Part shown: piece after piece, positions 1 through 64,000 of the stretch
Position numbering within the stretch: the stretch's first letter is position 1
Layout of the letters: the number at the start of each line of letters is the position of its first letter
Source: Macrostomum hystrix
Taxonomy: Eukaryota; Animalia; Platyhelminthes
DNA length: 64,000 bases
Direction: 5' to 3'
Assembly (NCBI GenBank): GCA_950097015.1
Contig: CATNEN010000002.1
Location: 8,122,001 to 8,186,000 of the forward strand
Position numbers and translations under genes: made by a program
The notes under the pieces: model-generated
What the model saw: the letters and a program-made list of their open reading frames with translations, nothing else
Database searches by the model: none
What the model was told of the DNA's origin: nothing

Positions 1-234
1 CGGCAGCGATAGCGGCAGCGATAGCGGCAGCGATAGCGGCAGCGATAGCGGCAGCGATAGCGGCAGCGATAGCGGCAGCGATAGCGGCAGCGATAGCGGC
101 AGCGATAGCGGCAGCGATAGCGGCAGCGATAGCGGCAGCGATAGCGGCAGCGATAGCGGAGCGGATAGCGAAGCGGATAGCGAAGCGGATAGCGGAGCGG
201 ATAGCGGAGCGGATAGCGAAGCGGATAGCGGAGC
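1..234. repeat. 12-bp satellite (CGGCAGCGATAG)n, degenerating to CGGAGCGGATAG
   Basis: Direct tandem repeat; the same unit recurs at 63841-64000. Confidence 0.97.
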
Positions 235-467
235 ACTGCATAATACAGAGATGTTTCACATTTCCCCACAGAAGCGGAACCACTCCCCGGACACTCCTGA
301 TGCACACTCCTGAATTATGTTATTGGCGATATACAAAAATTGTTCATTTTTTAGACTGGGAAGTATGTGTAGCAGATGAGCAATGTAGCAGATGATCGAT
401 GCAATATATTTTGTCATGCTTCATTTTGCTTTTTCCTTATAAAGCATAAGCCTTTTCTTTTTTTCAG

Positions 468-3400
468 AAATCAGAAAGCTCACATATGTTGTCACCTACA
501 GATCGCAACAGCATCTTTGCGGCAGCTAGAATTCTCAATGAAACGGAGGAATACGCAAACCTTTTGAATTTGAGTGCAGAATTCCGCGAACTCTATAAGT
601 GTATTAGCGAAGCATCCATAAAGGCAGGAACCATTGGGTTTAGCTTAGTTTTCGGTCCAAGTGGTACTGGTAAAACAACCCTGCATAGGTATGCTGCAGA
701 TGTTTTCAAGAAGGCTAGCTTCCCCACCTTTGTCCTGCCTTCTGATATCGCCAATGAACAAGCCGTTGTGACTGCTCTTGAAAATAATGGGTACAGTGAA
801 GTTTCTGCTATTCAAGAGTTTGGAATCCAAGTTGGCGAGTTCATTATTCAGCAACTAAGTCAAAATCGTTACGCTGAGCTTCGATGTTCTAATGATCTAT
901 TTGTGGCATCCATGCTGGAACCGCGCAAACCGTTTAAGAGACTACCAGGATTCGTTCTGTTGCATGATGCCACAAAAGAGGACAATCCAAATCCTGAAAA
1001 AAAACGCAGGTCTCGGAACATCTCCCACACTGCTTGCGAATCCCTTTCATCAAGTGTGAATGAGAGCCCAAAAGCCAAGAAGATGAGACTTGCGTACACA
1101 TCACCACCACACCGCTACTCTGGGTCACAACCGAGTGTGAAGAAGTCACCGTTGCAGGATGATAATGACTGCAAGGAAGCTCCACCAATCTTCAAGTTTG
1201 AGGTTGGATCATCAGTGCCATCAGTTACGTTTCCACTTTGTATGTCTGATTCGCACATGGCTGAAATGTACACTGACATTGACGACAACAAATACATCAC
1301 TTTTATGACAAGCCTCATGAGGGGATTGTCTGGGACTGGCACTACTGGAAGCGGTGCCATTGTGTGCTTCAGCAGTCGTCTTTCTCCACCCATGAAAGTG
1401 GACTATGAACGTGGAGAAGTCTTTGCTGCTACTGTAACTTCTTCAGCAAGACCTATTGTATACATGCGCCTAAACCCTGCCATGTCGCCAGCAGAAACTG
1501 ATTGCATTCATCGGTGAGTTTCCTTTTAATTAGCTATTGTGTTATTGAGCGTGTCAAGCCTTGTTATTTCTGATCTTATCAGCACCGATTAATCAGTTCA
1601 GTAGGCAGGAGTTCATACTCAGTTGGTTAGAATATATGTGAGCACTATCATTATTATGTGACATTAGGGGGTTGACTGGCTGGGTCCGAAATTACCGCTA
1701 ATGGGGGTGTATGTTATGTATTGACAATGTCTCTCATTAGGGTCTATTCGAATTCGCCGGGGAGAATGAGCAAATTTCTGAGGGAAAGTGGGGGCCAATA
1801 CAAGACTCCCTGTGGGTTGAAAAATAGGGCTAAAAATACTGGTTTGGGAGAGTATGGCCGCCAAGCATTAACAGTGTTCTCTGTCAAAACAATTATGATC
1901 ACGCTTTCCTCCCACAGGTATGTGCATACCAAACTCGTCGAGACATTAGAATCAAGTGGATTCCGCATAAACTCCGGTTTCAACCACTCGATTGCACGAC
2001 TGCTAGGGCTTGCAATTACCGGATTAGAGCATTCTATGCTGCGTTTAAAAGATTTTATTATCCAGTTAGAGGCGTGTTACCCTCAAGACGGACAAACTGA
2101 GTCCGGCCAGTTTTCCGATTCTTTGGAAAGAAAAATAGTCGATTTCTGCATGTCTGGCAACTTGACGGAATTAGAGGCAATTCACCTTGAGACAGTGGTC
2201 CGCAATGTCCCCGAGGGTTGGGAAGATTCTTTCTGCGCCAAATTGCTTATCGCAGCCTTCTCTGATGTGCCCGTGTCACTGACCAAACATGCAACTCGGG
2301 ATGCAGTGCTTCATTCCATTTTCCGTGTTATTAGCCAGTCTCCAATGAATAATTCTTCTGATATTTGCGTCCGCGTGGACAGTCGAATTACCAAAGTAAT
2401 ATTGACAAAACTGCAGGAATCGATCAAATGCAAACTCACTCAGGACATTCTCGGTCACTGCTGTGCTGTCTTGTTGCAGGCCGAAATTCCGAGTCACACA
2501 GGCACTGCTGTTCCCGGGGAGGCAATTTTCTTCGGTACTCGATTTGAGCAGGCATTTTTCTGCAAAACTGTCCTGCTATTGTGTTGCACCCAAATTGCAT
2601 TTGAGAAGCTTCCTCGCAATTGTTTTGGGCTGAGACAGCTGTTGCAACTCGGGTCAGATTCACCAACGAGCCAAAAAATGCAGGGGTGCGACAGGAACGA
2701 AGATGCTTTGCCCACGGGGCACAAAATCCCGTTAGTACGCTACTGCAAACGTGCTACCTTGATTAATCTGGAGGCCATAATCAAAGATTTCACCCAAGAG
2801 TTGACCAGGGAGGACCAGTCGGTTGTCAAATTCCTTGTCGTGAACACGCCAAATGTGACATCAGTGGACGTGGTGCTGGCTTGCGCTACATGTACCAGAA
2901 GACCGGACGCGAATGTGGATAGGAAGATGACGATTTGGCTGATCGAGTGTAAGTCGCTGTCTTTCATTAACATGCATTGTAAAAATGGTATTTAAGTTGT
3001 CGTTGTATTTAGGATTTAGTTGTAAAGTTAAAAGTATTTCAGTCTAATAGATAGTGAGTAATTGACTGTGTTTTCTGTGAGACCGACTATTGGTCACAAG
3101 TTTCCTTGGACCACTGTGATGTTTAAAGGACAGTTCTCAATTCCTTCACAAATAATATGGAGAGGAATATTCACATTTGGTAATTTTTCACTAGCAAAAC
3201 ATTTAATAATTTCCAGGCAAGTCATCGCTGCTTGCTGGACAGGATTTCAAAATGGCAGACAAGGACAGCCTGCTTGCAAAAGGCCAGCTGACATTTGAGC
3301 GCATCAAGACAGCTGCATCATCTGAAAACTGCTCTCTGAAGCTGAGCTACTCTATTCAGCTACTGAACAGGTCAGTAAGCTTCCAGGCCGCAGATCGGGA

Positions 3401-3629
3401 GCAACCGCCCCGTGCTGCGAAGAAGATTTCGCCATTGGATGTGTACTACAGTGAGCTCAGCGCATGTTCTGATTCGCCGTTGTTTCTACCTGGAGTGGCT
3501 GTCGCTTCCTCTCCGGAAATGTATATCTCTTCTAAATGCCGTTGCACGGACCTGCGCAATCAACTTCAGGAGGCATTTCGAGGCGGAGATCCTGGCGAAG
3601 GGGAACCTTGTGTTGATATAGTGCGTTAA
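468..3629 (+). CDS. Spliced P-loop NTPase (STAND-like) plus C-terminal PD-(D/E)xK nuclease-motif protein, ~880 aa; exons 468/486-1513, 1741-2948, 3217-3629
   Basis: Walker A FGPSGTGKTT, Walker B-like GFVLLHDA, sensor-like AIVCFSSR. Donor CG|GTGAGT (1514) and acceptor TTAG| (1740) are both phase 2. Donor T|GTAAGT (2949) and acceptor TTCCAG| (3216) are both phase 1, giving VDVV..IECKSS. A phase-0 acceptor with pyrimidine tract at 467 suggests an upstream exon or trans-splicing. Confidence 0.75.
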
Positions 3630-3763
3630 TATGCTTTACTTGTGGGTGCCAGCAGTGAGCAATCTTTACAGAACGATATTTTACACCATTTTTACCCCCT
3701 GCTTTAAAATGTGTCAAGCCTCCTCTATTTTTTTGTCCTAATTAATTTTTTGTCTCACATTTT

Positions 3764-4368
3764 GAGCTGAAATGTTAGCGAAGCGAGCTGAAATGTGAGC
3801 GAAGCGAGCTGAAATGTGTGCGAAGCGAGCTGAAATGTGAGCGAAGCGAGCTGAAATGTGAGCGAAGCGAGCTGAAATGTGAGCGAAGCGAGCTGAAATA
3901 TGTGCGAAGCGAGCTGAAATATGTGCGAAGCGAGCTGAAATGTGTGCGAAGCGAGCTGAAATATGTGCGAAGCGAGCTGAAATGTGAGCGAAGCGAGCTG
4001 AAATATGTGCGAAGCGAGCTGAAATGTGAGCGAAGCGAGCTGAAATATGTGCGAAGCGAGCTGAAATATGTGCGAAGCGAGCTGAGATGTGAGCGAAGCG
4101 AGCTGAAATATGTGCGAAGCGAGCTGAAATGTGAGCGAAGCGAGCTGAAATATGTGCGAAGCGAGCTGAAATATGTGCGAAGCGAGCTGAAATGTGAGCG
4201 AAGCGAGCTGAAATATGTGCGAAGCGAGCTGAAATGTGAGCGAAGCGAGCTGAAATGTGTGCGAAGCGAGCTGAAATGTGAGCGAAGCGAGCTGAAATAT
4301 GTGCGAAGCGAGCTGAAATGTGAGCGAAGCGAGCTGAAATGTGAGCGAAGCGAGCTGAAATGTGAGCG
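3764..4368. repeat. 21-bp minisatellite (GCGAAGCGAGCTGAAATGTGA)n
   Basis: Tandem array; explains the repetitive ORFs at 3738-4439. Confidence 0.97.
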
Positions 4369-4640
4369 GAGTGGATAACTGATAAAATACGCCATTCCCC
4401 CCTTCCCTCATATTGTACCATATTGTTTTTTATGCACATTTTAAACTCGCTGCTTTTGCTTTACTTGTCTCTAATGTAACGTATTTAGTAGTGTCTTTGG
4501 TACAGCTGGATCTCAACTGATAGGGAATTAATTAATTAATTAATTGCTCACTTGTTTGTTTAAGTTTCCCTTTGCAAGCCCATTGTCACTTGTTTTCCCT
4601 TGCCTAATGTGTAAAAACTGTTTAGTTTTATGCTACCCTG

Positions 4641-4678
4641 GTCACACGGACTTACACCGATGTGTAAGTCCGTGTGAC
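4641..4678. repeat. Perfect 17-bp inverted repeat with 4-nt loop (collapsed MITE-like hairpin)
   Basis: GTCACACGGACTTACAC-cgat-GTGTAAGTCCGTGTGAC. Confidence 0.85.
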
Positions 4679-5447
4679 AACAATATGTTACAGTGCTGAA
4701 TTATGTTATTGGCAATATGCAAAAATGGTACATTTCAAAATGCGGATGGCAAATCGTAGAAGCGTTAACGGAAGTGATAGCGGAAGCTAATAATATGTTA
4801 TTTTTAGCTGTGCGCAGTGCACTTATTCTGTTGTTACTTTTTACACTTTGCATTGCTGCATGAATGACTTTTTCTTTACAAATACTGCAATTCAGAAAGC
4901 CCCAATAAGAAATGTACCATTTTTTATACTGCCAGTACATACTGCTCCATCTATTTTCTGCTAAATGCACTCGTACATGTCCTTTCTCACAACGCACCAC
5001 ACACAACGTTGCATGCGCACTCAGTGTCGGTGTCAGCATTATTATTTTAATAATCCTTTCTATACACTTTTTTGTATCCAATTTCTTCAGGTCATGCAAA
5101 CCTAAAATCGATTAATTTTTATTCCCTTATCTTGGTTGACCTGTAGGTTGGGTAGAGCGTAGGAGTAGGTTGAGTAGAGTGTTAGAGTAGGTTGGGTAGA
5201 GTGAAGGAGTAGGGTGGGTAGAGTAGAGAGCGGATTCTGAACGGGATGAGAGGAGGCGGTATAGAGGTCGTGTCAACATAATATTGTGCACCACTTGTCA
5301 TTCTATTTTTCTCATCTTTCGTTATCAATAAATCAAATGAAAATAGTTCGTATTTACGATCGCACGCTCGCAATGTTGTTTTATTGTGCACAAAACATGG
5401 AGCATTGTTTTTTGTTCATTTTTGCTTTAGACTGGAGAATGAGATGA

Positions 5448-6075
5448 GGGGTGGCTAGGTGGGGAATTGGGTGGCTAGGTGGGGAGTTGGGTGGCTAGGT
5501 TTGGAGGTTTGTCGGGCTAGGTGGGGAGTTGGCTAGGTGGGGAATTGGGTGGCTAGGTGGGGAGTTGAGTGGCGAGGTGGGGAGTTGGGTGGCTAGGTTG
5601 GGAGGTTTGTCGGGCTAGGTGGGGAGTTGGCTAGGTGGGGAGTTGGCTAGGTGGGGAATTGGGTGGCTAGGTGGGGAGTTGGTTGGCTAGGTGGGGAATT
5701 AGGTGGCTAGGTGGGGAGTTGGGTGGCGAGGTGGGGAGTTGGGTGGCTAGGTGGGGAGTTGGGTGGCTAGGTGGGGAGTTGGGTGGCTAGGTGGGGAGTT
5801 GGGTGGCTAGGTGGGGAGTTGGGTGGCTAGGTGGGGAGTTGGGTGGCTAGGTGGGGAGTTGGGTGGCTAGGTGGGGAGTTGGGTGGCTAGGTGGGCAGTT
5901 GGGTGGCGAGGTGGGGAGTTGGGTGGCTAGGTGGGGAGTTGGGTGGCTAGGTGGGGAGTTGGGTGGCTAGGTGGGGAGTTGGGTGGCTAGGTGGGGAGTT
6001 GGGTGGCTAGGTGGGGAGTTGGGTGGCTAGGTGGGGAGTTGGGTGGCTAGGTGGGGAGTTGGGTGGCGAGGTGGG
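5448..6075. repeat. 20-bp G-rich satellite (GGGTGGCTAGGTGGGGAGTT)n
   Basis: Tandem array; related copies at 15961-16250 (inverted) and 63121-63203. Confidence 0.97.
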
Positions 6076-6721: not shown

Positions 6722-8355
6722 CTGGACCAGAGAGATACTATATTCAAGGGCTGGCTGGTTAAATCGCCGCCATTTCAACCATCTGGTGGTGGTTCCAGCA
6801 TTTTCCGTAGGCCACAGCCACTTCAACCAGTGAGTCTAAAGTGCATTATCATCCATTAGTATTATTGCACCAATGATACAATTTCCTCATTTTTTATAGC
6901 GCTGGCGGCGTCGCTATTTCGTACTAAGCTGCATCAGAACTAAAGACCGCTCTAGCAACTACCTACTGACCTATTATGAAGACGCACTGCAGACTAAGCG
7001 CAAGGGCCGGGTGGATTTGGAGCACGCCAATAACATCACTACTTACGTAATTCCGCCAATATATCTGCTGAACAAGCTGCAGCCTAGGCTTCTCCGCGCC
7101 CCAGCAAGGCCAGCATTCTTCAGACGGGATCAGACGGCATTCTTCCTGCTGGAGACTGTCCACCGCAGGCAGATGCGCACCTACTATTTCCTGCCAGAGG
7201 GCAATACCATGGAGCGCTGGGTCAGCCATCTGCGCAACGCGTGCGGACTTGGCGAAGACGATCTGTCCGGGATAAATGATAGCACTATCGATCCCTCTTA
7301 TAGAGAACAATTTCCTCCTCTATCTGGTGCGTCATTTCTACAAGTGCAGCAATTTCAGCCGCTCTCCCAAAACATGCTTTCACCGTCTGGTCGCTACATT
7401 CCAGGCGATAGCATCGATGGCACTATCAGGTAAGAAATGTGGGACTAGACTCGCGATTTAGCCTAGATTATTTATAGCCTAGAATGTGGTCTTTACTCTT
7501 TGATAAATAACTGTAAATTAAGGGATTTTCAGTGGGATTTCTAAGCTATAATCAAAGGATTTTCAGTGGGATTTCTGAGCTATAATCAAAGGATTTTCAG
7601 TGGGAGTTCTGAGCTTTAATCAATGGATTTACAGCGGGATTTCTGAGATTTAATTAATGGATTTACAGCGGGATTTCTGAGATTTAATTAATGGATTAAC
7701 AGCGGGATTTCTGAGCTTTAATCAATGGATTTACAGCGGGATTTCTGAGCTTTAATCAATGGATTTACTGCGAGATTTCTGAGCTACAATCAAGGGATTT
7801 ACAGCGGGTTTCTAGACCAGAATAACGAGTTATTTAATAAAGCATGTCTATGAGAAATCTGTAATTCCATTTTACCGATCGCTCCACGCCTCAACCGGTC
7901 GATTCCCGTTAAATTCTTCGATCAGACGACCAACTGCCCAGGCACCTGAAGACGATTATAGCATGCCTCCAACGGTTGCTAGAGGAGGCGGTAACCCTAG
8001 CAACGAATATGATTATCGCATGCCTCCTAGTACAGACGAGGACGATTATCGATTGCCGCCACCGCATGTTACGGGCCAAAGTTTATATAAAACTGGTGAA
8101 GATGAGTATCGATTGCCGCCTGTTGCGTCTGATCACCCCGAATTCGTTGAAGAAGATTATCGATTGCCTCCACCGCTGACTGGAAACGCTCCGGCCAGCA
8201 CTGACGAAGACGCTTACCGGTTGCCACCACAGCAACAGCAGCAGCAGTTAGCTACTGCTAGTCGCGCCGACCCTGACGCCAGTCAATACATCAACCTGGG
8301 ACCAACCGGCTGCCACCACAGCAACAAGCACCAGAGTCAGCGTGGATCGGGTTAG
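6722..8355 (+). CDS. Gab/DOS-like PH-domain docking protein; exons ~6722-6829, 6900-7429, 7926-8355
   Basis: Spliced PH domain IFKGWLVKSPP..|RWRRRYFVL..LTYYED..KRKGRVDL..WVSHLRNAC resembles the Gab/DOS N-terminus. Donor GTGAGT at 6830 (phase 0), donor GTAAG at 7430 (phase 2) and the matching acceptors are in frame. Six Y-[SR]-[ML]-P-P motifs plus YINL. No ATG at the expected start (CTG at 6722). Confidence 0.8.
7522..7812. repeat. ~34-bp intronic minisatellite (GGATTTACAGCGGGATTTCTGAGCTTTAATCAAT)
   Basis: Tandem imperfect copies inside intron 2 of the Gab-like gene. Confidence 0.9.
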
Positions 8356-8367
8356 GCAAATTTTGTA

Positions 8368-8705
8368 TTGATAAATTCTAACTTAAAACCTGTCCCTCTA
8401 TTTTTTGTTTTGTCTATAGACCTCCTCCTGCTGATGACTCTTATCTTGTCAATGTTACAAAGTTGTGGCTTTGTAAATTCAGGCTATTTGCCTATTGGGT
8501 TAACTAATCCATCTAGCTCAATCCATTTAATTGGAGACTTTAATGCCCACTCTAATGCCCATATGTCTTGGCTGAAATCAAATGGCACAGATGCCCATTG
8601 TAATATTCTTAAACCAATAGGAAATTCTGATCACTGTCTAATTTGATGGGTAAATTTAAATTTCAATACCTCTTTGGCCGCATTTGATTCCAGCAAGGAT
8701 TCCAG
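8368..8705 (+). mobile_element. Decayed non-LTR retrotransposon APE-endonuclease remnant
   Basis: Residual motifs IHLIGDFNAH and PIGNSDHCLI; a diverged copy at ~62560-63122 retains CFVYRP. Confidence 0.65.
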
Positions 8706-8903
8706 TATATAGGATGGCGTAATCCAAGTTGCCATAATTGATTTTGCCCATTGTTTCTGTAGCCACCTCTTCGTTGACCTAATGATGTACTTTGGCATTG
8801 CAGCAAACATATTTGCTGCAAGGTTCAGCAATTCAATTCTGCACAGCAACAGCGAACTCTTGCTAGCTTGCATTTGAACATTAAAGTTTTTCATTGTTTT
8901 CAG

Positions 8904-10127
8904 AGAATCGCAGAAAATTGCGACCACCAAAATTCGCCAACTTCGCCGCGGCCTATCCGCAGTACTGCGAGTCCAGATGCCCGGCTGTCCTAGCCGGAGC
9001 TGATAGTGTCGATGGCGTCGGCCCGTGTTGTCAGCAGCAGCAGCAGCGACAGTTTCTAGTCGAGCTAAACTACGCCACGAATCAGGGACCGACTAAACTA
9101 TTAAGTTTTGTCTACGTCGGCTCTCAAACTGACGCCTGCGACTCAGATGTGATCCGGCGTCACGGCATTACCCACATATTGAATGTGAGCGCCAATTGTC
9201 CGCAGTCGGAGCACGTCGACGAGGCTAATTTCATGCGGGTTCCAGTTAACGACGGCTACGCCGACAAATTGTTGCCGCATTTCAAACTGGCTTTCCAGTT
9301 TCTGGGTATGTGTTTGTTTTGCCTAAAAAACTTTTTTCTCGGCTATTGGCACTTAAAAGTTGTACATTTTTTGCCTATATGTATCGAAAAAATGTTTTAT
9401 CGACAGTACGTTTAAAAGTTTGTATTAAGCCGATATGTATCGAAAAATATACAAATATATCTTTATTCTCTTGCATTTTAGACAATGTCTGGCGTAGCAA
9501 CGGTCGCTGCCTTGTACACAGCCTTGCTGGCGTATCTCGCTCTCCAACCATGGTGATTGCATACATTATGCAGCATCTCAATATGACTCAAGATCAAGCT
9601 TATCAGTGAGCGGAATTTTATTTTTATAAGCGATATGCATTTTTAGAAAGGCTAATTATGCACAACCTAACAAAGTGACTTCTTCTGTTTTTAGCTACGT
9701 TAAGGCTCGCCGGCCTAGTATTAGTCCGAATTTCAATTTTCTTGGACAACTTTTGGAATTCGAACGCCAACTTCAGCAGCAAAAGCAGCAATCTGAGTCT
9801 TCGGCATCAACAGCAGAGGACTCAGACTCATCCTGCTCAGAAGCGAAGCGTCAGAAAAGATTCTGTCTGACGGCCGCCTCTGCTGCTTCAATAGTGGCTA
9901 GCACTGTCAGTGCAATGTCTAAAATGTCTTTCACCGCCCAGCAACAGCATCAGCAGCAGCGATCTGCCATTACCACAACTGACCGCATTGCAACTAAAAG
10001 GCGCCAACGACCGCTCAGTGAAGTTCTGCTTGACGAGAATTCCACTCCGTCTAATTCAACAGCATCGTCAGCTGCTGCTGTTGCTACCTCTTCCTCTGCG
10101 GCGCTTCCGCAAGCAACCACTGCCTAA
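8904..10127 (+). CDS. DUSP8/16 (MKP)-type phosphatase domain with catalytic Cys->Ser and most of the rhodanese domain missing; exons 8904-9305, 9482-9605, 9695-10127
   Basis: GPTKLLSFVYVGSQ..GITHILNVS, VHSLAGVSRS (AGC at 9520-9522), RRPSISPNFNFLGQLLEFE; splice phases 1 and 2 are consistent. Confidence 0.85.
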
Positions 10128-31990: not shown

Positions 31991-32073
31991 GACATTATTC
32001 TATTTGACATGTGTGGCATGGCTATGGCTTCAGAGTGCTAGTGTTTACATCATCTGTCTCTGTTCTCTTGCAG

Positions 32074-33081
32074 TCTAGCATTGGCAAGTTGCTTCAGTCC
32101 CAGTCGGATGGTGCGCTTTCTCCCTCTGGGACACTTCCTCGCTGCCCTGATCGGTCCATTGCTCTAGTTCTTTCGGCATCGCATGATGTTTCACTTCTTG
32201 ATGCCTGCAGTCGTCTTTGCAATTGTACTCGTCGACTGGAATATTCTGACATTCGCGTTCACACACTGGATGGCTATCGGCGTTGTGGTCGAGGAAAAGT
32301 AGCCGTGTTCCAATCTATCTCGGAGCCAGGAAAGTTTCTGTTTCTGCATGATGTTCGTGGTAGCAGTGTTAAGGGTGTTCACCGTCAAAATGCCAGCGAA
32401 TGGTTGAAACAAGACCGAATGTACTGCAAGTTACCTGAACGCCATCAAAAGGCAAGTCCGAAAGAGAGGCTGCAACGCAGACGTCTGCTTAGAAATCTTC
32501 AGCATCTCTGTCAACATGGCGATGCAAACTGCATTAATATTTTGTCTGCCGTTGCAAGTTCTCTCTGTTGCATGCAGAGACGTAGACGAGGCAGGGTTTT
32601 CGCTAAAAGTCGCCGAGTGAAGGTACCCGCCGATCCACGCAATCGGGAGGAGTCCTCCACTTCTGACGATCAGCAGCCGGCCGCTGCTGGCAGTCCGCCG
32701 ACCGCTACTGCTAATATGCCAGCCGCTGCTGGCAGTCCGCCGACCGCTGCTGCTAATATGCCGGCCGCTGCTGGCAGTCCGCCGACCGCTGCTGCTAATA
32801 TGCCGGCCGCTGCTGGCAGTCCGCCGACCGCTGCTGCTAATATGCCGGCCGCTGCTGGCAGTCCGCCGACCGCTGCTGCTAATATGCCAGCCGCTGCTGG
32901 CAGTCCGCCGACCGCTGCTGCTAATATGCCGGCCGCTGCTGGCAGTCCGACCGCCGGCGCTAGCGGTCGCGATCAGCATTCGGGGCGGCGACTGGAGATA
33001 CGTGCGTCGCTAAAGCGCCAGTGCACTTCAGTACCTGACGTTCAGAGGCAGTTACGGCAGAGAAACAAGAAACATTTTTAG
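32074..33081 (+). CDS. Exon-like ORF, possibly the degenerate NTPase exon of the second NTPase-nuclease paralog
   Basis: Phase-0 acceptor CTTGCAG| at 32073; SISEPGKFLFLHDV resembles SMLEP..GFVLLHDA; 42-bp AAAGSPPTAAANMP repeat; no intact Walker A. Confidence 0.4.
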   Translation, partial: SSIGKLLQSQSDGALSPSGTLPRCPDRSIALVLSASHDVSLLDACSRLCNCTRRLEYSDIRVHTLDGYRRCGRGKVAVFQSISEPGKFLFLHDVRGSSVKGVHRQNASEWLKQDRMYCKLPERHQKASPKERLQRRRLLRNLQHLCQHGDANCINILSAVASSLCCMQRRRRGRVFAKSRRVKVPADPRNREESSTSDDQQPAAAGSPPTATANMPAAAGSPPTAAANMPAAAGSPPTAAANMPAAAGSPPTAAANMPAAAGSPPTAAANMPAAAGSPPTAAANMPAAAGSPTAGASGRDQHSGRRLEIRASLKRQCTSVPDVQRQLRQRNKKHF

Positions 33082-33422: not shown

Positions 33423-34333
33423 TTCATTGCCAAGTGTAGTTGCACTGCATTTTTATGCAAGAACAAGATGCCTTGGCCGTTCGCTTGATTCTCACAATTG
33501 AATTTAAATTTACGATTTAGATATTCATAAAGTATATACATATAGGATGTTGCCCGCCTTTAAATCAAGCTGTACTATTTGCGAGCTAGGAAGCTTCTCA
33601 GAGGCTTGCTTCGATCTTTCGATCGATCGATTTCGGAGTTCGGGTCTTTAAATAAAATTGTCCCCTATTTCAGGCCTCCCAACTTACGTATATATTACAT
33701 TTCTAACGCATTTGCTTTCGCGCCATGCTATTATTTCTGAGTCCTGAGTATGGCGGGTCCGGACACAGCGATTAGGCGAGCGTCGCCCATTTTGCTATTG
33801 CAGTAATCCACCTTTCAGTAAATTTTAGACTTAAAGAAGACTTGAGACTTACTACTTTTTGACTGCAGAACTTCACATTTTAGGCATAAAAATGAGAAAA
33901 ACTTCTAGGCTAGTTACATTACTTTATTTATCTATCGAACTTAATCCAACAAAATAATACTCAGGTGCTAATCAAGCATACAGCGAGCTGCTCTTTGAAA
34001 AACTGTTGGCATTTCATTCTCACTTCTCAGTCAATCTAAGACAAATAACTGTCTAATAATCATATTCAGAGTATAGAAATTCTCCTTATGGCTACGAGCA
34101 TAAAAACTCGGCGCAAAACAGCTCACAAACAAATCGTCTACAACAATTAGTGACTCAATGGAGCCGATTGTTTTCCCTGGGCAGTGAAGAAAATGCATAT
34201 ACATGTAAGAAACATTAAAAAGAAAAAGGATTGGCAAGTTTAGGAATTTTTTCTGCACACAGCAGTGGACAATGGACAGTGGACAGCAAGTAAATAGCAA
34301 GTCTAAGAAACAAAAAATGCTAAAAAAAAGGCG

Positions 34334-36134
34334 TTGAGCTTTAAGATTAAAGATCAAGTCGTTAGTATCCCTCGTGCTACAGACATCATCGCAAGTCGGG
34401 AGACAGCCTTCTATCGCCTTCACCCTGCAGCACTTTCTGTGGGTGGAGGGAAGTGTTTCCACGAGCACGTCTTCACAACAATCACGAAGTATCTGAAGTT
34501 GAGAGGGTGCAATGATTCGAGAGCCCAACTTGTGGCAGTACGCGTTCTGGGGATTGTGTTAACTGCAGCGGAATATTCCATGAGACAATTTCAAGTTATC
34601 ATGTTATGCTTAAAAAAAAGTCCAGACCTGAGAGATTCACTGGACGATAGCCAAATTGAGACTAGTCTGGTTAACGCCTGTTGCCTGTCTGGGTTGTCAT
34701 CGAAGGAGTCGGCGCGCCTTGATGCCGTATTTGCAAGCTGCCAATCTGATGAGGAGAAAACTGAACTACGGCTCAAGATGATCCTGGCGTCGCTGTCCGA
34801 CGTGCCCGTCTCCTTGGCGTCGCATGTGACCAGGGACACCGTTAACTACTCAGTCATTCAAATTGTGTTCATGCCGAAGCTGGAGAGCACTGGCGGCTTC
34901 CCCATTCATGTGAAGGTACGCATGCAGATCCGCCTCTTGCGTCGCATGCTCTATGACGTGCTCAAGCCGCTGGAAGGGAAAGACAACTATCTGGCTCTGA
35001 AAGACTGTGTAGATGCGCTGCTGGAGGCCAGACTTCCCACCCACGTGGCAGCGTTGAATGCTGGCACAGCTGTTTACTTCGGCTGCAAGTTCGAGCTGTG
35101 CGTCTTTTCCAGAATGTTTCTGCTGCTGTACTGCTGCCGTGGAGCGTTTCTCAGCGGCTTTCCAGAGGACTGCTTTGGCATCGTAGAGCTGCTCCTACTT
35201 GGCGAGCCAATTGCAGGCGTCACACATGGACTTAAGGACAATCTTCCTGGACTGGATTTCCCAGCTAACCTGCACTTCACGGAATTGAAGTGGTGCACTT
35301 CTAAATGCCGCGGAACTCTGTTGTGCAGCGAGCTGGCAACTTTCGTGACGTCAGAGCACGGCAAAAAGCCGGGTGTTCGATTTTTCATCGCGCACACTCC
35401 GCATGTTGATTCCATTGACATAGTTGTGGCCGGTGCTGTCACCCGCCAGCTCGTGGACGAGAAAGTGGAGCAGCAAGTAACAGTTTGGCTAATTGAGTGT
35501 AAGTTGCTTCTCTTCATTGCCCTATGATTTCCATCGCATCCAACCCATTGAGAATCGCCTCCAACTCTCATTAGGAATCGCCCACATAAGAATATTTTTT
35601 ACTTAAGTGGCATATCTGCATCTACGCAGAAAGGCTACTCAGTTTCCACAACGGGTAAGCAAATCGTCATTTGCAGGCAAATCATCGACGGCATCCCGGA
35701 CACCGTTCACGTACACTGACGTTTTTTGCCTTCTGGAGAAGGGCAAGAATGTGTTCGACTCGTTGAAACGTGCCGCGACGGTCGAAGATGCCCCAGAGCC
35801 GTACATATAATACAGCATTCAGCTGCTAAATCGGCCTTGCATCTTTCCTGTACCTGAACGTACAAACGTGCCGCGGGACGCCAAGCTGCCCGAATGTCCG
35901 CCGACGATCCGCACGGTGCGCTGCATGCAGCACCGAGTGTCGGTTGATTCGGCAATTTTTTTGCCTGGCCTGGCGGCGTCCCTCAGTCCGAATATCTATC
36001 TGCCTTACGACTGCAAACCATGCGAGCAACTGAGGACCAGACTGATGACGGTCTATAACGCTGACATGGATGCATCTGATGCAGCTGGGGATGCACCAAG
36101 ACTCATTCGGACTTTTTCTTTTTTGAATTTCTGA
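34334..36134 (+). pseudogene. Divergent paralog of exons 2-3 of the NTPase-nuclease gene, with an in-frame TAA at 35808-35810; exons ~34334-35498, 35677-36134
   Basis: Shared blocks SDVPVSL..H.TRD, FG..FE, CFG..LL.LG, WLIECKSS, LL.KG, YSIQLLNR, FLPG.A; identical phase-1 intron inside the Cys codon of ECK. Confidence 0.75.
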
Positions 36135-36947
36135 GCCGAGGGCCAAGAGGCAGTGTGTTTAAGAATCTAGCCAGTCGATGGACCAGGAGGGAGCCCAGCC
36201 TGTGTGGCGTCCTTAGTAACCGGCCCCTGGAAACAGCATCCGGCATTCCAGCATAAGTCAACTAAGTGAATTAGTTTTATAACAGGCTATATTTGAATTC
36301 GTGCTAAAAATATGCTACGCGTATGCTTATAATATTCGACTTATGCGATTTGTTAAGATGAAAAGAAATATACCGTGTGTATGCTGAGTGTATTAGGAAT
36401 ATTGCTATAAATAGAGGCGGGAAGTGATAAAGACAGTAACCGTTTCGTGCCCATTATTAGAAACAGTTCAATTCTCCTCGTGAGCAATCTTACAAAAGCC
36501 TTACTTATTTCTAAAGTAAGTGGAAGCCGTTGAAACCGATCCGGGGAAGCCCGAGTACAGACTGGCCAGAGAGCCTGAATTACCTGACAAAACTTGTCTG
36601 AATCACCTGAGAGCATTGTCTCCAGATCTAACTAGATTTAATATCTAGAATATAACTGGCAGGAGGCCAGAAATATCGTGACAAAGAGCCACGCTACCCA
36701 AACTATCTGTAGTTTGCATAAGTCCACCCGAGCAGGGGTGTGGTATAATGTATATGTCACTCTAAAATGATTGACAGGCAATAAGTCAGAAGTTTAGGCC
36801 AATTACTTACAGTATGAGGAGAGTTTGAATTACTAGAAAAGTGCAATTGTAAAAGAAGCACTACTACAACTTGGTGGCAGCGGAAAAGGATCGGAAAAGC
36901 GGCGGAATCTTACTTAGAAATAAGCTATTCATAGTCAAATAGTCAAA

Positions 36948-38066
36948 ATGAATGCCAACGATGCAATCGCCATGCTAGCAGAAGAACTAAGAAACCGATT
37001 AGAGCTGGGACCGACGAGACATGTCAAAATTCAAAAATTTACGCCAAATCAGGAAATCAGAATTTGGCTGACAGCCTTTGACCAGCGCTGCGAAGCTGAA
37101 GGAATAGAGGAGGCACACAGGAAGCGCGAGCTCCTAGCCAACCTCGATCTCTCAACTGCGTTTGCCGCAGTGCAGCGTATGAACTTACCGGACGATCTAG
37201 ATTACGAAGAATTTAAAGAAAGACTAGTGGAACGTTTCGGAAGAACAGGAAGCTCCGCCGAATTTAGGGAAGAATTTAGAAGCCGTAGTCAAGGACGCAA
37301 CGAACCAGTGGAAAATTTCTCTGACGCTCTTATCGAACTAGCTACCAGAGCATTTCCGAATATGACCGCAGAACAGAGAGAAGAAGAAATAATAGAACAA
37401 TTTATTAAAGGAGTGAAAGTACCGGCTGAAACCAGAGAGAAGCTTATTTTTGCTGCACCAGCAACTCTACAAGATGCAAGGAGAATGCTGAGACGCATGG
37501 AAACAGCGTGGAACATGTCCCACAAAGGTGTTAGTATGAAGATGGCCAAGAGTGATGAAGCTGAACAAAAGAGACAGAGCAGGATTGAAGAAATATTGCT
37601 GAGGCAACAAGAAGAACTAGAACAACAAAAGAGAACCATGCAAGAACTCATGGTCAGTGTCCAGATGGCTACTCAGAACCTGCAGCAGCAGCAGAACTAT
37701 CAGCAGCAGCAGAACTATCCGCAGCAGCAGCAGCAGAACTATCAGCAGCAGAATTATCAGCAGCGGCAGAACTATCAGCAGCAGCAGAATTATCAGCAAC
37801 GGCAGAACTATCAGCAGCAGCAGAACTATCAGCCGAAACAGCAGCAGAACCATCAGCAACAGCAGAACTATCAGCGGCAGAACTATCAGCAGAGACAGCA
37901 GCCAAATACTCAAGCGCAACAGCAGCAGTCGCAGAACTATCAGCAGCAGCAACAGCAGCAGGATCGCCCGCCGCGAATCTGCTTCAATTGTGGCAATAAC
38001 GGACATGTGGCCAAATTCTGCCGAAGTTCTGGACCGGCTAATTCCAATCAGCAGCAGGGAAACTGA
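36948..38066 (+). CDS. gag: Gag with QQQQNY repeats and CCHC zinc knuckle
   Basis: CFNCGNNGHVAKFC; capsid-like N-terminal part. Confidence 0.9.
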   Translation: MNANDAIAMLAEELRNRLELGPTRHVKIQKFTPNQEIRIWLTAFDQRCEAEGIEEAHRKRELLANLDLSTAFAAVQRMNLPDDLDYEEFKERLVERFGRTGSSAEFREEFRSRSQGRNEPVENFSDALIELATRAFPNMTAEQREEEIIEQFIKGVKVPAETREKLIFAAPATLQDARRMLRRMETAWNMSHKGVSMKMAKSDEAEQKRQSRIEEILLRQQEELEQQKRTMQELMVSVQMATQNLQQQQNYQQQQNYPQQQQQNYQQQNYQQRQNYQQQQNYQQRQNYQQQQNYQPKQQQNHQQQQNYQRQNYQQRQQPNTQAQQQQSQNYQQQQQQQDRPPRICFNCGNNGHVAKFCRSSGPANSNQQQGN

Positions 38067-38100
38067 AGAGCGAGGATCGAGCAGAGAGGCCCCGATCCTC
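38057..38100 (+). promoter_or_regulatory. -1 ribosomal frameshift signal
   Basis: Slippery G GGA AAC (38057-38063), 8-nt spacer, 8-bp stem GAGGATCG/CGATCCTC; pol is in the -1 frame and open from here. Confidence 0.8.
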
Positions 38101-40954: not shown

Positions 40955-41307
40955 GCGAACGCCCACCACCCCAGGCCAGTAAGCCAATGGGTGATGATAT
41001 TGCTCACATATTCTCCGTGTATTATTGTGTAATCTGGCGATACCTATATCGCTAATATATCCTGCGTGTATCAAATTTGTATTGTTGTGTAATTCCTACG
41101 ATAAGACTGCGTCACGAAAATATTTTAAATACTCTCCGCATATTATTTGGTATATTTTGTATACACCTCGATATCCTCATTGTAAACAAAATCTCGGCAT
41201 CCTATTGGTCAGGCACTCGCCCATTTTGTGACTATATAAAGGGCCACCTCGGAACAAGGGTTGCGCTAGCTAAGTGCTCTACTGAGACATACAGCCAACT
41301 CGCCATA

Positions 41308-42186
41308 ATGGCCGAAAATACCTCACTGAGTGATTTCTTACAAGAACTCATTGACTGTAATGAAGTTCAAAATGAATTCACAGGAGTGAGTGTGGAAGTC
41401 CTGCCAGCAGGCAGCGAAACTGAGCCGCCAATAGGCGAATGCAATGTGGTTGACACCACGCCACGCAACGAATTGGCCGCTCCACTGCGGCAGGCCACGC
41501 GGCCGAAACCACCTGCCTATATGGGCACGGCTGTCAAGCGGATGAGAACCTCAAGCCCGCGGCTGGAACCAGAGAATCGGCCACGAGGATCGCCGCAAAG
41601 CCGAGTCTCTAGGCTGCCAATATCTACAGCCGAGATTCGTAGACCTACAGTGCTATTGCAGCAGCCACCTGCGCATAGACCATCACAGAAGACAAAGGTG
41701 GTGCAACAACCAAAGCCGCAATCAACAGTGTACAGACCACCGCCACGGCAGCCGCTGGCTCCACGGCCTCAGAAGTCATCTACGCCGGAGGATAATTGGC
41801 CACCGCGGTCTGCAGCAGCACACGCCCGGGCCGATCGGCCGGCTGCGTCAAGGATTCCACCACCCAGAATCGGGACCCGCGAAGAGCGAGTGGCCAAAGC
41901 GCAGCACAAGCTAACGCAATATCTGCTAAAAATTGTGTTCCTGCGCCATGACCAAGCACTGCCGCAGAGGGCGCACATATGGCCGTCGATTCGCTCCCTA
42001 CGCAGTGCGACGGACACGGCCGGGGCCATTACGGCCATGGAGACGGTCGCTGACAGGATACGGCGAGCTCTAAATGCAGGCGACAGGCAGGCCTTCAAGA
42101 CCCTACTAAACATCGAGGTACGCTGGATCCTTATCCAGCTAGGCTGGATACATTACGAGGAACCACCACCGCAATTTGAGTTCTAG
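41308..42186 (+). CDS. Retroelement ORF3 of unknown function (292 aa from ATG 41308)
   Basis: Acidic N-terminus, Pro/Arg-rich middle, helical-looking C-terminus; ATTGG at 41204 and TATATAAA at 41233-41240 upstream. Confidence 0.7.
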   Translation: MAENTSLSDFLQELIDCNEVQNEFTGVSVEVLPAGSETEPPIGECNVVDTTPRNELAAPLRQATRPKPPAYMGTAVKRMRTSSPRLEPENRPRGSPQSRVSRLPISTAEIRRPTVLLQQPPAHRPSQKTKVVQQPKPQSTVYRPPPRQPLAPRPQKSSTPEDNWPPRSAAAHARADRPAASRIPPPRIGTREERVAKAQHKLTQYLLKIVFLRHDQALPQRAHIWPSIRSLRSATDTAGAITAMETVADRIRRALNAGDRQAFKTLLNIEVRWILIQLGWIHYEEPPPQFEF

Positions 42187-63509: not shown

Positions 63510-63732
63510 CCCATTGGCATTGGCATCTGTCTGGCGTCTGTTCGGCATTAGCATGGTGTTTGGCATGTGTCTGGCATCAGTTTGGCATTGGCATAGTGTT
63601 TGGCATCTGTCTGGCATTAGTTTGGCGTCTGGCATTGCCAGCATTGGCAAACTTTTGAAATATAGTTTTGAAAACAGTAGCAAAGGTATAAAACTCCTCG
63701 CACGGAGGAGACGATTTCGGAGTTAAGCTTCG
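63510..63732. repeat. Inverted copy of the composite head plus minisatellite repeat
   Basis: Reverse complement of ~21092-21290. Confidence 0.88.
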
Positions 63733-63840
63733 TGAAAGTACCTGAGAAAATAGATTCAAATTCAATTCATATAATCCAGCATAAAAGTGGATTCGGTTAA
63801 TTTAGGTTAATAAAGGTTAATTTTAAGTTTAAGTTAAATA

Positions 63841-64000
63841 GCGGGAGCGATAGCGGGAGCAATAGCGGCAGCGATAGTGGCAGCGATAGCGGCAGCGATA
63901 GCGGCAGCGATAGCGGCAGCGATAGCGGCAGCGATAGCGGCAGCGATAGCGGCAGCGATAGCGGCAGCGATAGCGGCAGCGATAGCGGCAGCGATAGCGG
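63841..64000. repeat. 12-bp satellite (CGGCAGCGATAG)n
   Basis: Same unit and orientation as at the window start. Confidence 0.97.

What the first reader, a model, noticed from the sequence alone, without database searches (positions are those of the whole stretch)
468..3629. Three ORFs are one spliced NTPase plus restriction-like nuclease gene (Crinkler/RHS-like architecture) in an animal-like genome
Seen: ORFs 486-1517, 1721-2995 and 3252-3629 join through consensus GT-AG introns with exactly matching phases into ~880 aa. The product has Walker A GPSGTGKT, a Walker B-like VLLHDA, a STAND-like 'IVCFSSR' strand, an 'L..MS..E' motif, and near the C-terminus VDVV-x~20-IECK, which fits a PD-(D/E)xK nuclease. 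Established: NTPase plus REase pairs define Crinkler/RHS effectors and prokaryotic STAND ATPase-nuclease fusions, and are linked to conflict systems and transposons. Inference: this may be an undescribed animal effector, immune or selfish-element family.
Basis: partly seen in the sequence, partly recalled or inferred. Interest (0 to 1): 0.78.

Follow-up and report, generated by a model that had tools for sequence, protein, structure and literature searches.

The report
Fast-evolving flatworm NTPase with nuclease-like tail
The three ORFs are exons of one real, expressed, trans-spliced flatworm (Macrostomum-type) gene for an 823-residue protein that has an ATP-binding domain and a conserved nuclease-like motif, almost no relatives anywhere, and unusually fast protein evolution; its nuclease fold is not yet shown.

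Summary
The gene is real. Transcript-like contigs from four runs of one study join 1513|1918 and 2948|3217 at GT..AG introns. They also carry the Macrostomum spliced leader, joined at 467|468. Its intron-1 acceptor (1740/1741) is wrong, so the product is 823 aa, not ~880.

- **Exon 1:** a P-loop NTPase of AAA+/STAND flavour. All family hits are below threshold, but they agree.
- **Exon 2 and exon 3:** no family, PDB or fold match.
- **D-x(16-25)-ExK block:** invariant across paralogs only ~30% identical, and it lies on a predicted beta-hairpin. A PD-(D/E)xK nuclease is plausible but unproven. Intron 2 splits the domain, and the joined protein was not built, by rule.
- **Relatives:** a profile search of 1.84 billion proteins found only two genomic fragments.
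- **In this genome:** one intact copy, one broken duplicate 64 kb downstream, and further fragments.
- **Evolution:** against its closest relative dN/dS is 1.2-1.4, and dN exceeds intron divergence, yet the frame stays open.
- **Not supported:** Crinkler, RHS or transposon membership.

The scan's first stage noted the broken duplicate separately (s1-395438).

The parts
461..467 (+). Trans-splice acceptor (polypyrimidine tract then AG at 466-467). The Macrostomum spliced leader is joined here.
   Evidence: all four spliced contigs carry 21-22 leader letters before 467; the leader matches the published M. lignano SL and an SL RNA gene of this genome; the 22-mer occurs at 30 sites, none near the gene.
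468..1513 (+). Exon 1: 5'UTR 468-485, CDS 486-1513 (342 codons plus 2 bases). Encodes the P-loop NTPase core, with a low-complexity basic insert (KKRRSR at 999-1016).
   Evidence: contigs cover 467-1512/1513; AAA_16, ATPase_2, AAA_22, RuvB, clamp loader; all below threshold; basic patches.
654..680 (+). Walker A, GPSGTGKTT (residues 57-65)
   Evidence: sequence; G57, G62, K63, T64, T65 and L66 are invariant in A, B and C.
948..968 (+). Walker B-like strand GFVLLHD (D161). No following acidic catalytic residue in A or B.
   Evidence: (L158 and L159 invariant; D kept in A and B, shifted in C).
1359..1379 (+). IVCFSSR, a sensor-1/STAND-like strand (residues 292-298)
   Evidence: (F295 and S296 invariant; R298 is E in homolog C).
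1514..1917 (+). Intron 1 (404 nt, GT..AG, phase 2)
   Evidence: joint 1512/1513 to 1917/1918 in 4 of 4 runs. The same position and phase occur in homolog C. The intron is absent in paralog B.
1918..2948 (+). Exon 2 (343 full codons, 1919-2947). Contains a helical region whose first ~80 residues resemble AAA+ lid bundles, a variable linker, and the first half of the nuclease-like domain.
2534..2548 (+). Invariant G-x-x-F-E motif (G206, F209, E210 of exon 2). It may be the helix-1 acidic residue of a PD-(D/E)xK domain. This is a lead only.
   Evidence: invariant columns; archaeal DUF234 proteins show G-x-x-F-E before their D...ECK, but hhalign gives no support.
2822..2948 (+). Conserved beta-beta-beta block: VVKFLVVNTP, SVDVVLACA (D at 2867-2869), and TIWLIE-C (E at 2945-2947; the C codon is split by intron 2).
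   Evidence: V303, F305, T310, P311, S315, D317, V319, A321, A323, L341, I342, E343 invariant; E302-311, E316-327, E333-342 after H281-296.
2949..3216 (+). Intron 2 (268 nt, GT..AG, phase 1), inside the ExK motif
   Evidence: joint 2948|3217 in 4 of 4 runs. The same position occurs in B, C and L025.
3217..3629 (+). Exon 3 coding part. K of ExK is at 3219-3221, followed by KSS, a conserved helix and strand, then the tail motif FLPG..SSP..Y..C..C..LR..L. Stop codon at 3627-3629.
3630..3807 (+). 3'UTR, at least this far. It runs into the 21-bp minisatellite, where the contigs end.
   Evidence: contigs extend ~67 nt beyond 3740; array 3764-4368.
34319..36062 (+). Paralog B, 3' fragment. It covers the end of the NTPase, an exon-2 equivalent (to 35500, 29-30% identity), the same intron-2 position, and an exon-3 equivalent (35679-36062) with an in-frame TAA at 35808-35810. 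It has no NTPase core, so it is a pseudogene fragment. It lies just before a Gypsy element.
63732..64000 (+). Start of the second copy of the ~5.35-kb duplicated unit (unit = window -205..5145). Its gene copy A' lies just beyond the window and is broken.

Best explanation
Window 468-3807 is a host gene of a Macrostomum-type flatworm. It has three exons, is SL trans-spliced and expressed, and encodes an 823-aa cytoplasmic or nuclear protein without a signal peptide.

The domain layout has four parts:
1. An N-terminal AAA+/STAND-like P-loop NTPase. It has a ~90-residue basic, NLS-like insert between Walker B and the sensor strand, and is followed by a lid-like helical bundle.
2. A helical middle region.
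3. A C-terminal alpha/beta domain. Its invariant D (residue 660) and E-x-K (686-688) face each other across a beta-hairpin, as in PD-(D/E)xK nucleases.
4. A conserved Cys-containing tail.

Likely mechanism (inferred): nucleotide binding by the NTPase acts as a switch rather than a motor, because no catalytic acid follows Walker B. The switch would control oligomerisation or activation of the C-terminal nuclease on nucleic acid in the nucleus.

The family is lineage-restricted and evolves by birth-and-death with amino-acid diversification. That is the pattern of genes in genetic conflict, such as defence against viruses or transposons, or a selfish toxin-like gene.

- Shown: gene model, expression, trans-splicing, P-loop motifs, conservation of D/ExK, rarity of relatives, dN/dS at or above 1 with the frame kept open.
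- Inferred: nuclease fold and activity, nuclear location, conflict role.
For: **Gene model and expression**
- spliced contigs in four runs, identical to copy A and not to A'.

**Trans-splicing**
- leader letters at 467.
- the 22-mer occurs 30 times in the genome, in tandem arrays elsewhere.
- it equals the published M. lignano SL.
- an SL RNA gene has the full 44-nt SL followed by GTAAG.

**NTPase**
- AAA_16 E=0.002, ATPase_2 E=0.0055, AAA_22 E=0.0078.
- Atlas score 0.88-0.91, with ten of ten hits in AAA_16, AAA_22, STAND or Orc1-like clusters.
- RuvB, ORC1, clamp loader.
- GKTT invariant.
- lid-like bundle directly after the core.

**Nuclease-like block**
- this is the densest run of invariant residues outside Walker A, with D317, E343, C and K kept at ~30% identity.
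- alpha-beta-beta-beta order.
- D and E are symmetric about the hairpin turn, and homolog C's 9-residue deletion sits at the hairpin tip, so the D/E register is kept.

**Selection**
- dN/dS is 1.23 (exon 2) and 1.41 (exon 3) against L025. Intron 2 is 92.5% identical, against 88.5% and 84.5% for the exons.
- nonsynonymous versus intron changes, Fisher p=0.006.
- the frame stays open in only 0.5-0.8% of neutral simulations.
- exon indels are multiples of three.

**Narrow family**
- almost no relatives in public collections.

**Birth-and-death**
- copies in this genome and their state.
Against: **Fold and family**
- No statistical link of exon 2 or 3 to any nuclease family: Pfam, NCBIfam, PHROGs, PADLOC, PDB hmmsearch, Foldseek and VIA.
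- hhalign against 23-29 archaeal ATPase_2+DUF234 proteins also gave nothing (P about 0.05-0.2).
- The only usable model has pLDDT 48, so its strands are a prediction of secondary structure and not a fold.
- D-x(n)-E-x-K is a short pattern that occurs by chance.
- All NTPase family hits are below the curated cut-offs and rest mainly on the P-loop region.
- Walker B and the sensor residues are not strictly kept in homolog C.

**Selection and expression**
- dN/dS versus dS alone is not significantly above 1 (p=0.29).
- That test rests on one pairwise comparison with a metagenomic contig of unknown species.
- Expression evidence comes from one study, and the kind of run is not on record.
Confidence: 0.5

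Rival explanations
1. A lineage-specific AAA+/STAND-like ATPase whose C-terminal domain is not a nuclease. The conserved D/ExK hairpin would serve binding or structure. The gene would be one of the many fast-evolving, for example reproduction-related, Macrostomum genes with no role in nucleic-acid cleavage.
For: No nuclease family, PDB or fold match for exon 2 or 3. The Atlas features for exon 2 point only to helical-repeat proteins, at sub-threshold scores. High dN/dS is also typical of reproductive genes.
Against: The D...ExK block is the most conserved part of exon 2/3 across ~30%-identical copies. Its hydrophobic-strand context and hairpin symmetry match the PD-(D/E)xK core. NTPase plus helical region plus REase is a recurrent architecture (PMC5289972).
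Confidence: 0.3
2. A remnant or domesticated gene of a DNA transposon or other selfish element that encodes an ATPase plus a restriction-like nuclease. This is the kind of prokaryotic transposon core from which Crinkler C-termini are thought to derive. It would now be decaying in the flatworm genome.
For: Several broken or partial copies exist: A', the B 5' part on C9, the B 3' part in the window, and NTPase fragments on C1 and C33. The B fragment abuts a Gypsy element. Weak P-loop hits include TnsC, TniB and a phage transposition protein.
Against: - Only one intact copy and about five fragments in 220 Mb.
- The 5.35-kb duplicated unit has no terminal inverted repeats, and its copies differ in flanks like a segmental duplication.
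- Intron positions are conserved between ~30%-identical homologs from different sources.
- The mRNA is SL trans-spliced like host genes.
- The frame is kept open under selection.
Confidence: 0.12
3. A true member of the Crinkler (CR/CRN) or RHS effector families, that is, a delivered toxin.
For: The order NTPase, helical region, REase-like domain is the commonest CR C-terminal layout (PMC5289972).
Against: The mRNA 5' end is defined by the spliced leader 18 nt before the ATG, and the NTPase starts at about residue 45. There is therefore no header/Ubl domain, no LxLFLAK or HVLVxxP motif, and no signal peptide. There is no Crinkler or RHS Pfam hit. The exon-2 profile finds no CR protein among 1.84 billion representatives.
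Confidence: 0.05

Closest known systems
Crinkler (CRN/CR) effector C-termini of the 'NTPase + HTH + REase' type (Zhang et al. 2016, as summarised in PMC5289972)
   Same: Same order of modules: P-loop NTPase, then a helical region, then a restriction-endonuclease-like D...ExK domain. Also found in eukaryotes and linked to conflict and rapid diversification.
   Different: No header/Ubl domain, no LxLFLAK or HVLVxxP motifs, no secretion signal. No detectable sequence similarity. It is a single intact intracellular gene with conserved introns and SL trans-splicing, not an expanded effector repertoire.
Archaeal and bacterial ATPase_2 (PF01637) + DUF234 (PF03008) proteins
   Same: An AAA+-type ATPase N-terminal to a PD-(D/E)xK-like domain. 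The short motifs resemble those here: G-x-x-F-E, then (E/S)-I-D-h-V, then h-h-h-E-C-K. ATPase_2 is among the best sub-threshold Pfam hits.
   Different: hhalign of the exon profiles against 23-29 such proteins is not significant (P 0.04 for Walker A only; 0.1-0.2 for the nuclease part). The flatworm protein is about 350 aa longer, with a ~105-aa spacer between the F-E helix and the D strand and a long insert in the NTPase.
STAND NTPases and AAA_16-type switch ATPases with nuclease effectors (for example prokaryotic Avs-type defence proteins; named from my own knowledge)
   Same: Walker A; Walker B without a catalytic Glu; an hhhFS(S/T)R-like strand; an R-L-x-P-A motif after it; a helical arm; a nuclease-like effector domain; fast evolution.
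   Different: No NACHT, NB-ARC or nSTAND Pfam hit. No C-terminal repeat sensor (TPR, LRR or WD40). The effector is C-terminal rather than N-terminal. The sensor Arg is not invariant.

Membership tests
Crinkler (CR/CRN) effectors | N-terminal header domain (Ubl fold with LxLFLAK, ending in HVLVxxP) | tested here: not met
   The spliced leader joins 18 nt before the ATG. Walker A is at residues 57-65. No Crinkler Pfam hit in exon 1. None of these motifs is in the translated exon.
Crinkler (CR/CRN) effectors | C-terminal toxin module NTPase + HTH + REase that is homologous to CR families | tested here: inconclusive
   The module order is alike, but no sequence relative was found (exon-2 profile against 1.84 billion representatives). 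CR family profiles were not on hand.
RHS/YD toxins | RHS/YD repeat shell before the toxin domain | tested here: not met
   No RHS Pfam hit in any exon. The protein starts directly with the NTPase.
P-loop NTPase, AAA+/STAND class | Walker A GxxxxGK[ST] and Walker B hhhhD on a conserved core | tested here: met
   GPSGTGKTT and FVLLHD are present. GKTT and LL are invariant in three ~30%-identical homologs.
P-loop NTPase, AAA+/STAND class | Significant match to a curated AAA+/STAND family model | tested here: not met
   The best hit is AAA_16 at 19 bits against a cut-off of 32.6. ATPase_2 scores 17 against 33.2. The Atlas features agree in class but are leads only. The single-sequence AF2 model was unusable (pLDDT 33).
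P-loop NTPase, AAA+/STAND class | Helical lid or arm domain directly after the core | tested here: inconclusive
PD-(D/E)xK (restriction endonuclease-like) nucleases | Catalytic D ... (D/E)xK on adjacent beta-strands 2 and 3 | tested here: met
   D317 and E343-C-K are kept in A, B, C and L025. They lie on predicted strands E316-327 and E333-342 and are symmetric about the turn. This is motif-level and secondary-structure-level evidence only.
PD-(D/E)xK (restriction endonuclease-like) nucleases | Alpha-beta-beta-beta-alpha-beta core fold, recognised by profile or structure comparison | tested here: inconclusive
No hit in Pfam, PDB hmmsearch, Foldseek, VIA or hhalign against DUF234.
DNA transposon | Terminal inverted repeats, target-site duplication, many copies | tested here: not met
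   No TIR between the ends of the 5.35-kb duplicated unit. There is one intact copy, one near-identical broken copy and a few fragments.

The most novel reading that the evidence does not exclude
A flatworm-restricted, positively selected, NTP-switched PD-(D/E)xK nuclease that acts as a cell-autonomous immune or anti-transposon effector. This would be an animal counterpart of prokaryotic STAND/AAA+-nuclease defence proteins. It either arose independently or has diverged beyond sequence recognition, and it evolves by local birth-and-death in a small gene cluster.
Probability: 0.22. Interest if true: 0.72.

Novelty: new variant of a known kind. Interest (0 to 1): 0.45.

Why it matters
If the C-terminal domain is an active nuclease gated by the NTPase, this would be a new animal family with the 'ATPase switch plus nuclease' logic known from bacterial anti-phage systems and Crinkler toxins. 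It sits in a lab-tractable flatworm genus where RNAi, in situ hybridisation and transgenesis are available, so the idea can be tested.

The case also shows how such genes escape annotation. The gene has no family hit, is split by introns inside its key motif, and has almost no relatives in 1.84 billion protein clusters.

If the nuclease reading fails, it remains an ordinary orphan, fast-evolving P-loop gene of modest interest.

Tried and rejected
**Searches and models that gave nothing**
- AF2 of exon 1 as a single sequence: pLDDT 33, unusable.
- AF2 of exon 2 with a 5-sequence alignment: pLDDT 48, so only secondary structure was used.
- Foldseek against PDB: no match at E<=0.001.
- PDB hmmsearch with profiles of exon 1, the nuclease N-half, exon 2 and exon 3: P-loop hits only, or nothing.
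- Pfam, PADLOC, NCBIfam and PHROGs on all exons of A, B and C: P-loop hits only.
- ESM Atlas for exon 2: sub-threshold helical-repeat leads.
- Word-based protein search: one fragment for exon 2 and none for the exon-1 profile.
- Metagenome locus scan: none.
- DUF234 (PF03008) in this genome: none.
- hhalign of the exon profiles against archaeal ATPase_2+DUF234 proteins fetched for the purpose: not significant.

**Readings rejected**
- A transposon reading.
- P0003 from the big search: a repetitive 697-aa protein hit in nine stretches, judged spurious.

**Left out**
- The joined spliced protein was never assembled, searched or folded. All searches were exon by exon, by reference.
Full report
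**1. Observation**

I laid the contigs of four public runs on window 240-3740. The runs come from one study; their kind is not on record, and their contig sets are small, 39-50 million letters. Each run gave one contig of 2.67-2.69 kb. These contigs cover 467-1512, 1917-2948 and 3217-3740 with no mismatch and no gap, and they skip 404 and 268 bases at GT..AG joints.

The exons are therefore 468-1513, 1918-2948 and 3217 onward. The CDS is 486-1513, 1918-2948 and 3217-3626, with the stop at 3627-3629. That is 342 + 1 + 343 + 1 + 136 = 823 residues.

Its intron-1 acceptor (1740/1741) has the same phase but is not used, so 59 codons of its model are intron.

The paralog on contig C9 has no intron 1. 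It reads straight from the end of the NTPase into sequence that aligns with what follows 1918. This confirms the corrected joint independently.

**2. The mRNA is trans-spliced, and the genome is a Macrostomum-type flatworm**

- All four contigs carry 21-22 extra letters before 467.
- Together with the G at 467, these letters form a 22-mer that occurs 30 times in the genome. None is near the gene, and many sit in ~11.6-kb tandem arrays.
- The 22-mer is the 3' end of the published Macrostomum lignano spliced leader (PMC5173321).
- One array unit holds the full 44-nt leader followed by GTAAG.
- A low-depth contig over 240-496 looks like the unprocessed outron.
- The leader's terminal ATG is in frame with the ORF, six codons upstream of the genomic ATG (read).

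The leader fixes the 5' end of the mRNA, so no upstream coding exon exists.

**3. What the protein looks like, exon by exon**

*Exon 1.* It has Walker A (GPSGTGKTT), a Walker B-like FVLLHD, and an IVCFSSR strand followed by R-L-x-P-A.
- Pfam gives only sub-threshold hits: AAA_16, ATPase_2, AAA_22 and AAA_5.
- NCBIfam and PHROGs add RuvB, ORC1-type, clamp loader and DnaA-like hits. These span the helix before the P-loop.
- The Atlas feature search places exon 1 among AAA_16, AAA_22, STAND and Orc1-like clusters. Scores are 0.88-0.91, and ten of ten hits fall in one clan.
- GKTT is invariant in homologs of ~30% identity.
- A ~90-residue low-complexity insert with basic patches (KKRRSR, KKMR) lies between Walker B and the sensor strand. 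Homologs B and C also have basic patches there.
- No acidic catalytic residue follows the Walker B Asp in A or B. This suggests a nucleotide switch rather than a motor (inference).

*Exon 2.* It has no family hit anywhere. AF2 with a five-sequence alignment reached only pLDDT 48.
- The model's secondary structure is eleven helices, a short strand (E273-276), then H281-296, E302-311, E316-327 and E333-342.

*The nuclease-like block.* The last ~45 residues of exon 2 plus the first residues of exon 3 hold the densest run of invariant positions outside Walker A. These are V-x-F, T-P, S-x-D-x-V-x-A-x-A and L-I-E-C-K-S-S.
- D317 opens predicted strand 2 and E343 closes predicted strand 3.
- Both are equidistant from the turn (RRPDAN in A). 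Homolog C's nine-residue deletion lies at that turn. The hairpin would therefore keep D opposite E-x-K, as in PD-(D/E)xK enzymes.
- An invariant G-x-x-F-E sits ~105 residues upstream. It resembles the helix-1 motif of some REase families.
- Archaeal ATPase_2+DUF234 proteins that I fetched show G-x-x-F-E, then E-I-D-h-V, then h-h-h-E-C-K.

All of this is motif-level evidence. Statistical tests gave nothing:
- PDB hmmsearch.
- Pfam at E up to 10.
- Foldseek and VIA.
- hhalign against 23-29 DUF234 proteins (P about 0.05-0.2).

Intron 2 cuts the domain inside E-x-K, and every homolog has that intron.

**4. Relatives**

A profile of exon 2 searched against 1.84 billion cluster representatives found two real hits:
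- P0001 is a 214-aa piece from a JGI metagenome contig. It is 74-80% identical, genomic, and has the same intron 2.
- P0002 comes from a 2.8-kb Logan contig. It is ~30% identical and has all three exons open. Both introns are at the same positions and phases.

A third hit is a repeat artefact. The word-based searches and a metagenome scan added nothing.

**5. Copies in this genome**

| Copy | Place | State |
|---|---|---|
| A | window 486-3629 | Intact and expressed |
| A' | begins 554 bases beyond the window's end | ~99.3% identical in exons 1-2 and intron 1; 2-nt deletion in exon 1 (at 1214-1215 of A); 80-nt deletion in exon 3 (3436-3515); lacks the 21-bp minisatellite |
| B, 3' part | window 34319-36062 | 5'-truncated, with an in-frame TAA at 35808-35810 |
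| B, 5' part | contig C9 | NTPase plus the start of exon 2 |
| NTPase fragments | contigs C1 and C33 | Short fragments only |

- A' belongs to a ~5.35-kb duplicated unit (window -205..5145) with no terminal inverted repeats.
- The laid contigs match A exactly, not A'.
- This pattern is a small birth-and-death family, not a transposon.

**6. Mode of evolution**

I compared A with L025:

| Region | Nucleotide identity | dN/dS |
|---|---|---|
| Exon 2 | 88.5% | 1.23 |
| Intron 2 | 92.5% | n/a |
| Exon 3 | 84.5% | 1.41 |

- Nonsynonymous change exceeds intron change (Fisher p=0.006). It does not significantly exceed synonymous change (p=0.29).
- Exon indels are multiples of three.
- With the observed number of substitutions placed at random, the frame stays open in only 0.5-0.8% of simulations.

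The protein is therefore kept, while its amino acids change at or above the neutral rate. This points to diversifying selection. It rests on a single pair of sequences.

**7. Interpretation**

The best-supported reading is a host gene for an intracellular, probably nuclear, NTP-switched protein with a PD-(D/E)xK-like C-terminal domain, evolving like a conflict gene.

- The architecture parallels the NTPase+HTH+REase C-termini of Crinkler effectors (PMC5289972) and prokaryotic ATPase-REase proteins.
- Membership in Crinkler or RHS fails on the header and repeat tests.
- No homology to any named family could be shown.
- The main rival is that the C-terminal domain is not a nuclease.

**8. Earlier notes of the scan**

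- A first-stage reader flagged the broken duplicate A' with the same kind of reading (s1-395438). I show that it is a pseudogene copy.
- A follow-up note called this genome flatworm-like (s1-395437). The spliced leader confirms this.
- The Gypsy element noted at 36278-43049 (s1-395525) lies just after paralog fragment B.

Noticed in passing
window 461-488; SL RNA genes e.g. L016:1440-1580 (-): The gene's mRNA carries the Macrostomum spliced leader. The leader's terminal ATG is in frame with the ORF, six codons upstream of the genomic ATG, so two in-frame starts are possible. SL RNA genes (44-nt leader plus GTAAG) lie in ~11.6-kb tandem arrays on contigs C15, C17 and C42.
   Followed up: partly
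window 1-231 and 3764-4368: The gene is bracketed by two minisatellites: a 12-bp unit (CGGCAGCGATAG, x19) upstream and a 21-bp unit (x29) that begins inside the 3'UTR. The 21-bp array is missing from the duplicated copy A'. More arrays follow at 5143-5224 and 5449-6000.
   Followed up: partly
window 8323-9000 and 59666-60343: A 678-bp inverted repeat, 100% identical, lies inside the interval between the two gene copies. It is probably two copies of a young repeat element. Related ~90% copies occur at about 62.1-63.1 kb and about 7.5-8.3 kb upstream of the window.
   Followed up: no
window 34319-36062: A 5'-truncated paralog fragment of the same family (~30% identical), with a premature TAA, lies directly before the Gypsy element noted at 36278-43049. 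Its missing 5' part has a 94%-identical counterpart on contig C9 (L004).
   Followed up: partly
window 32011-33081 (+): A 356-aa ORF has a tandem PAAAGSPPTAAANM repeat and a 'KFLFLHD' stretch that recalls the family's Walker B strand. It has no Walker A. tblastn with the family's exon 1 did not match it.
   Followed up: partly
L030 (G000:C1:14653351-14653692) and L031 (G000:C33:1188111-1188269): More distant NTPase-only fragments of the family. The C1 fragment has LVHGPSGCGKSTL in a 162-aa ORF, and the C33 fragment has a degenerate P-loop. No exon-2-like or exon-3-like sequence was found beside them.
   Followed up: partly
L025:675-930 versus window 2949-3216: Intron 2 is better conserved (92.5%) than the flanking exons (88.5% and 84.5%) between this gene and its closest relative from a JGI metagenome contig. 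The ORF read-through into the intron start is identical in both.
   Followed up: partly
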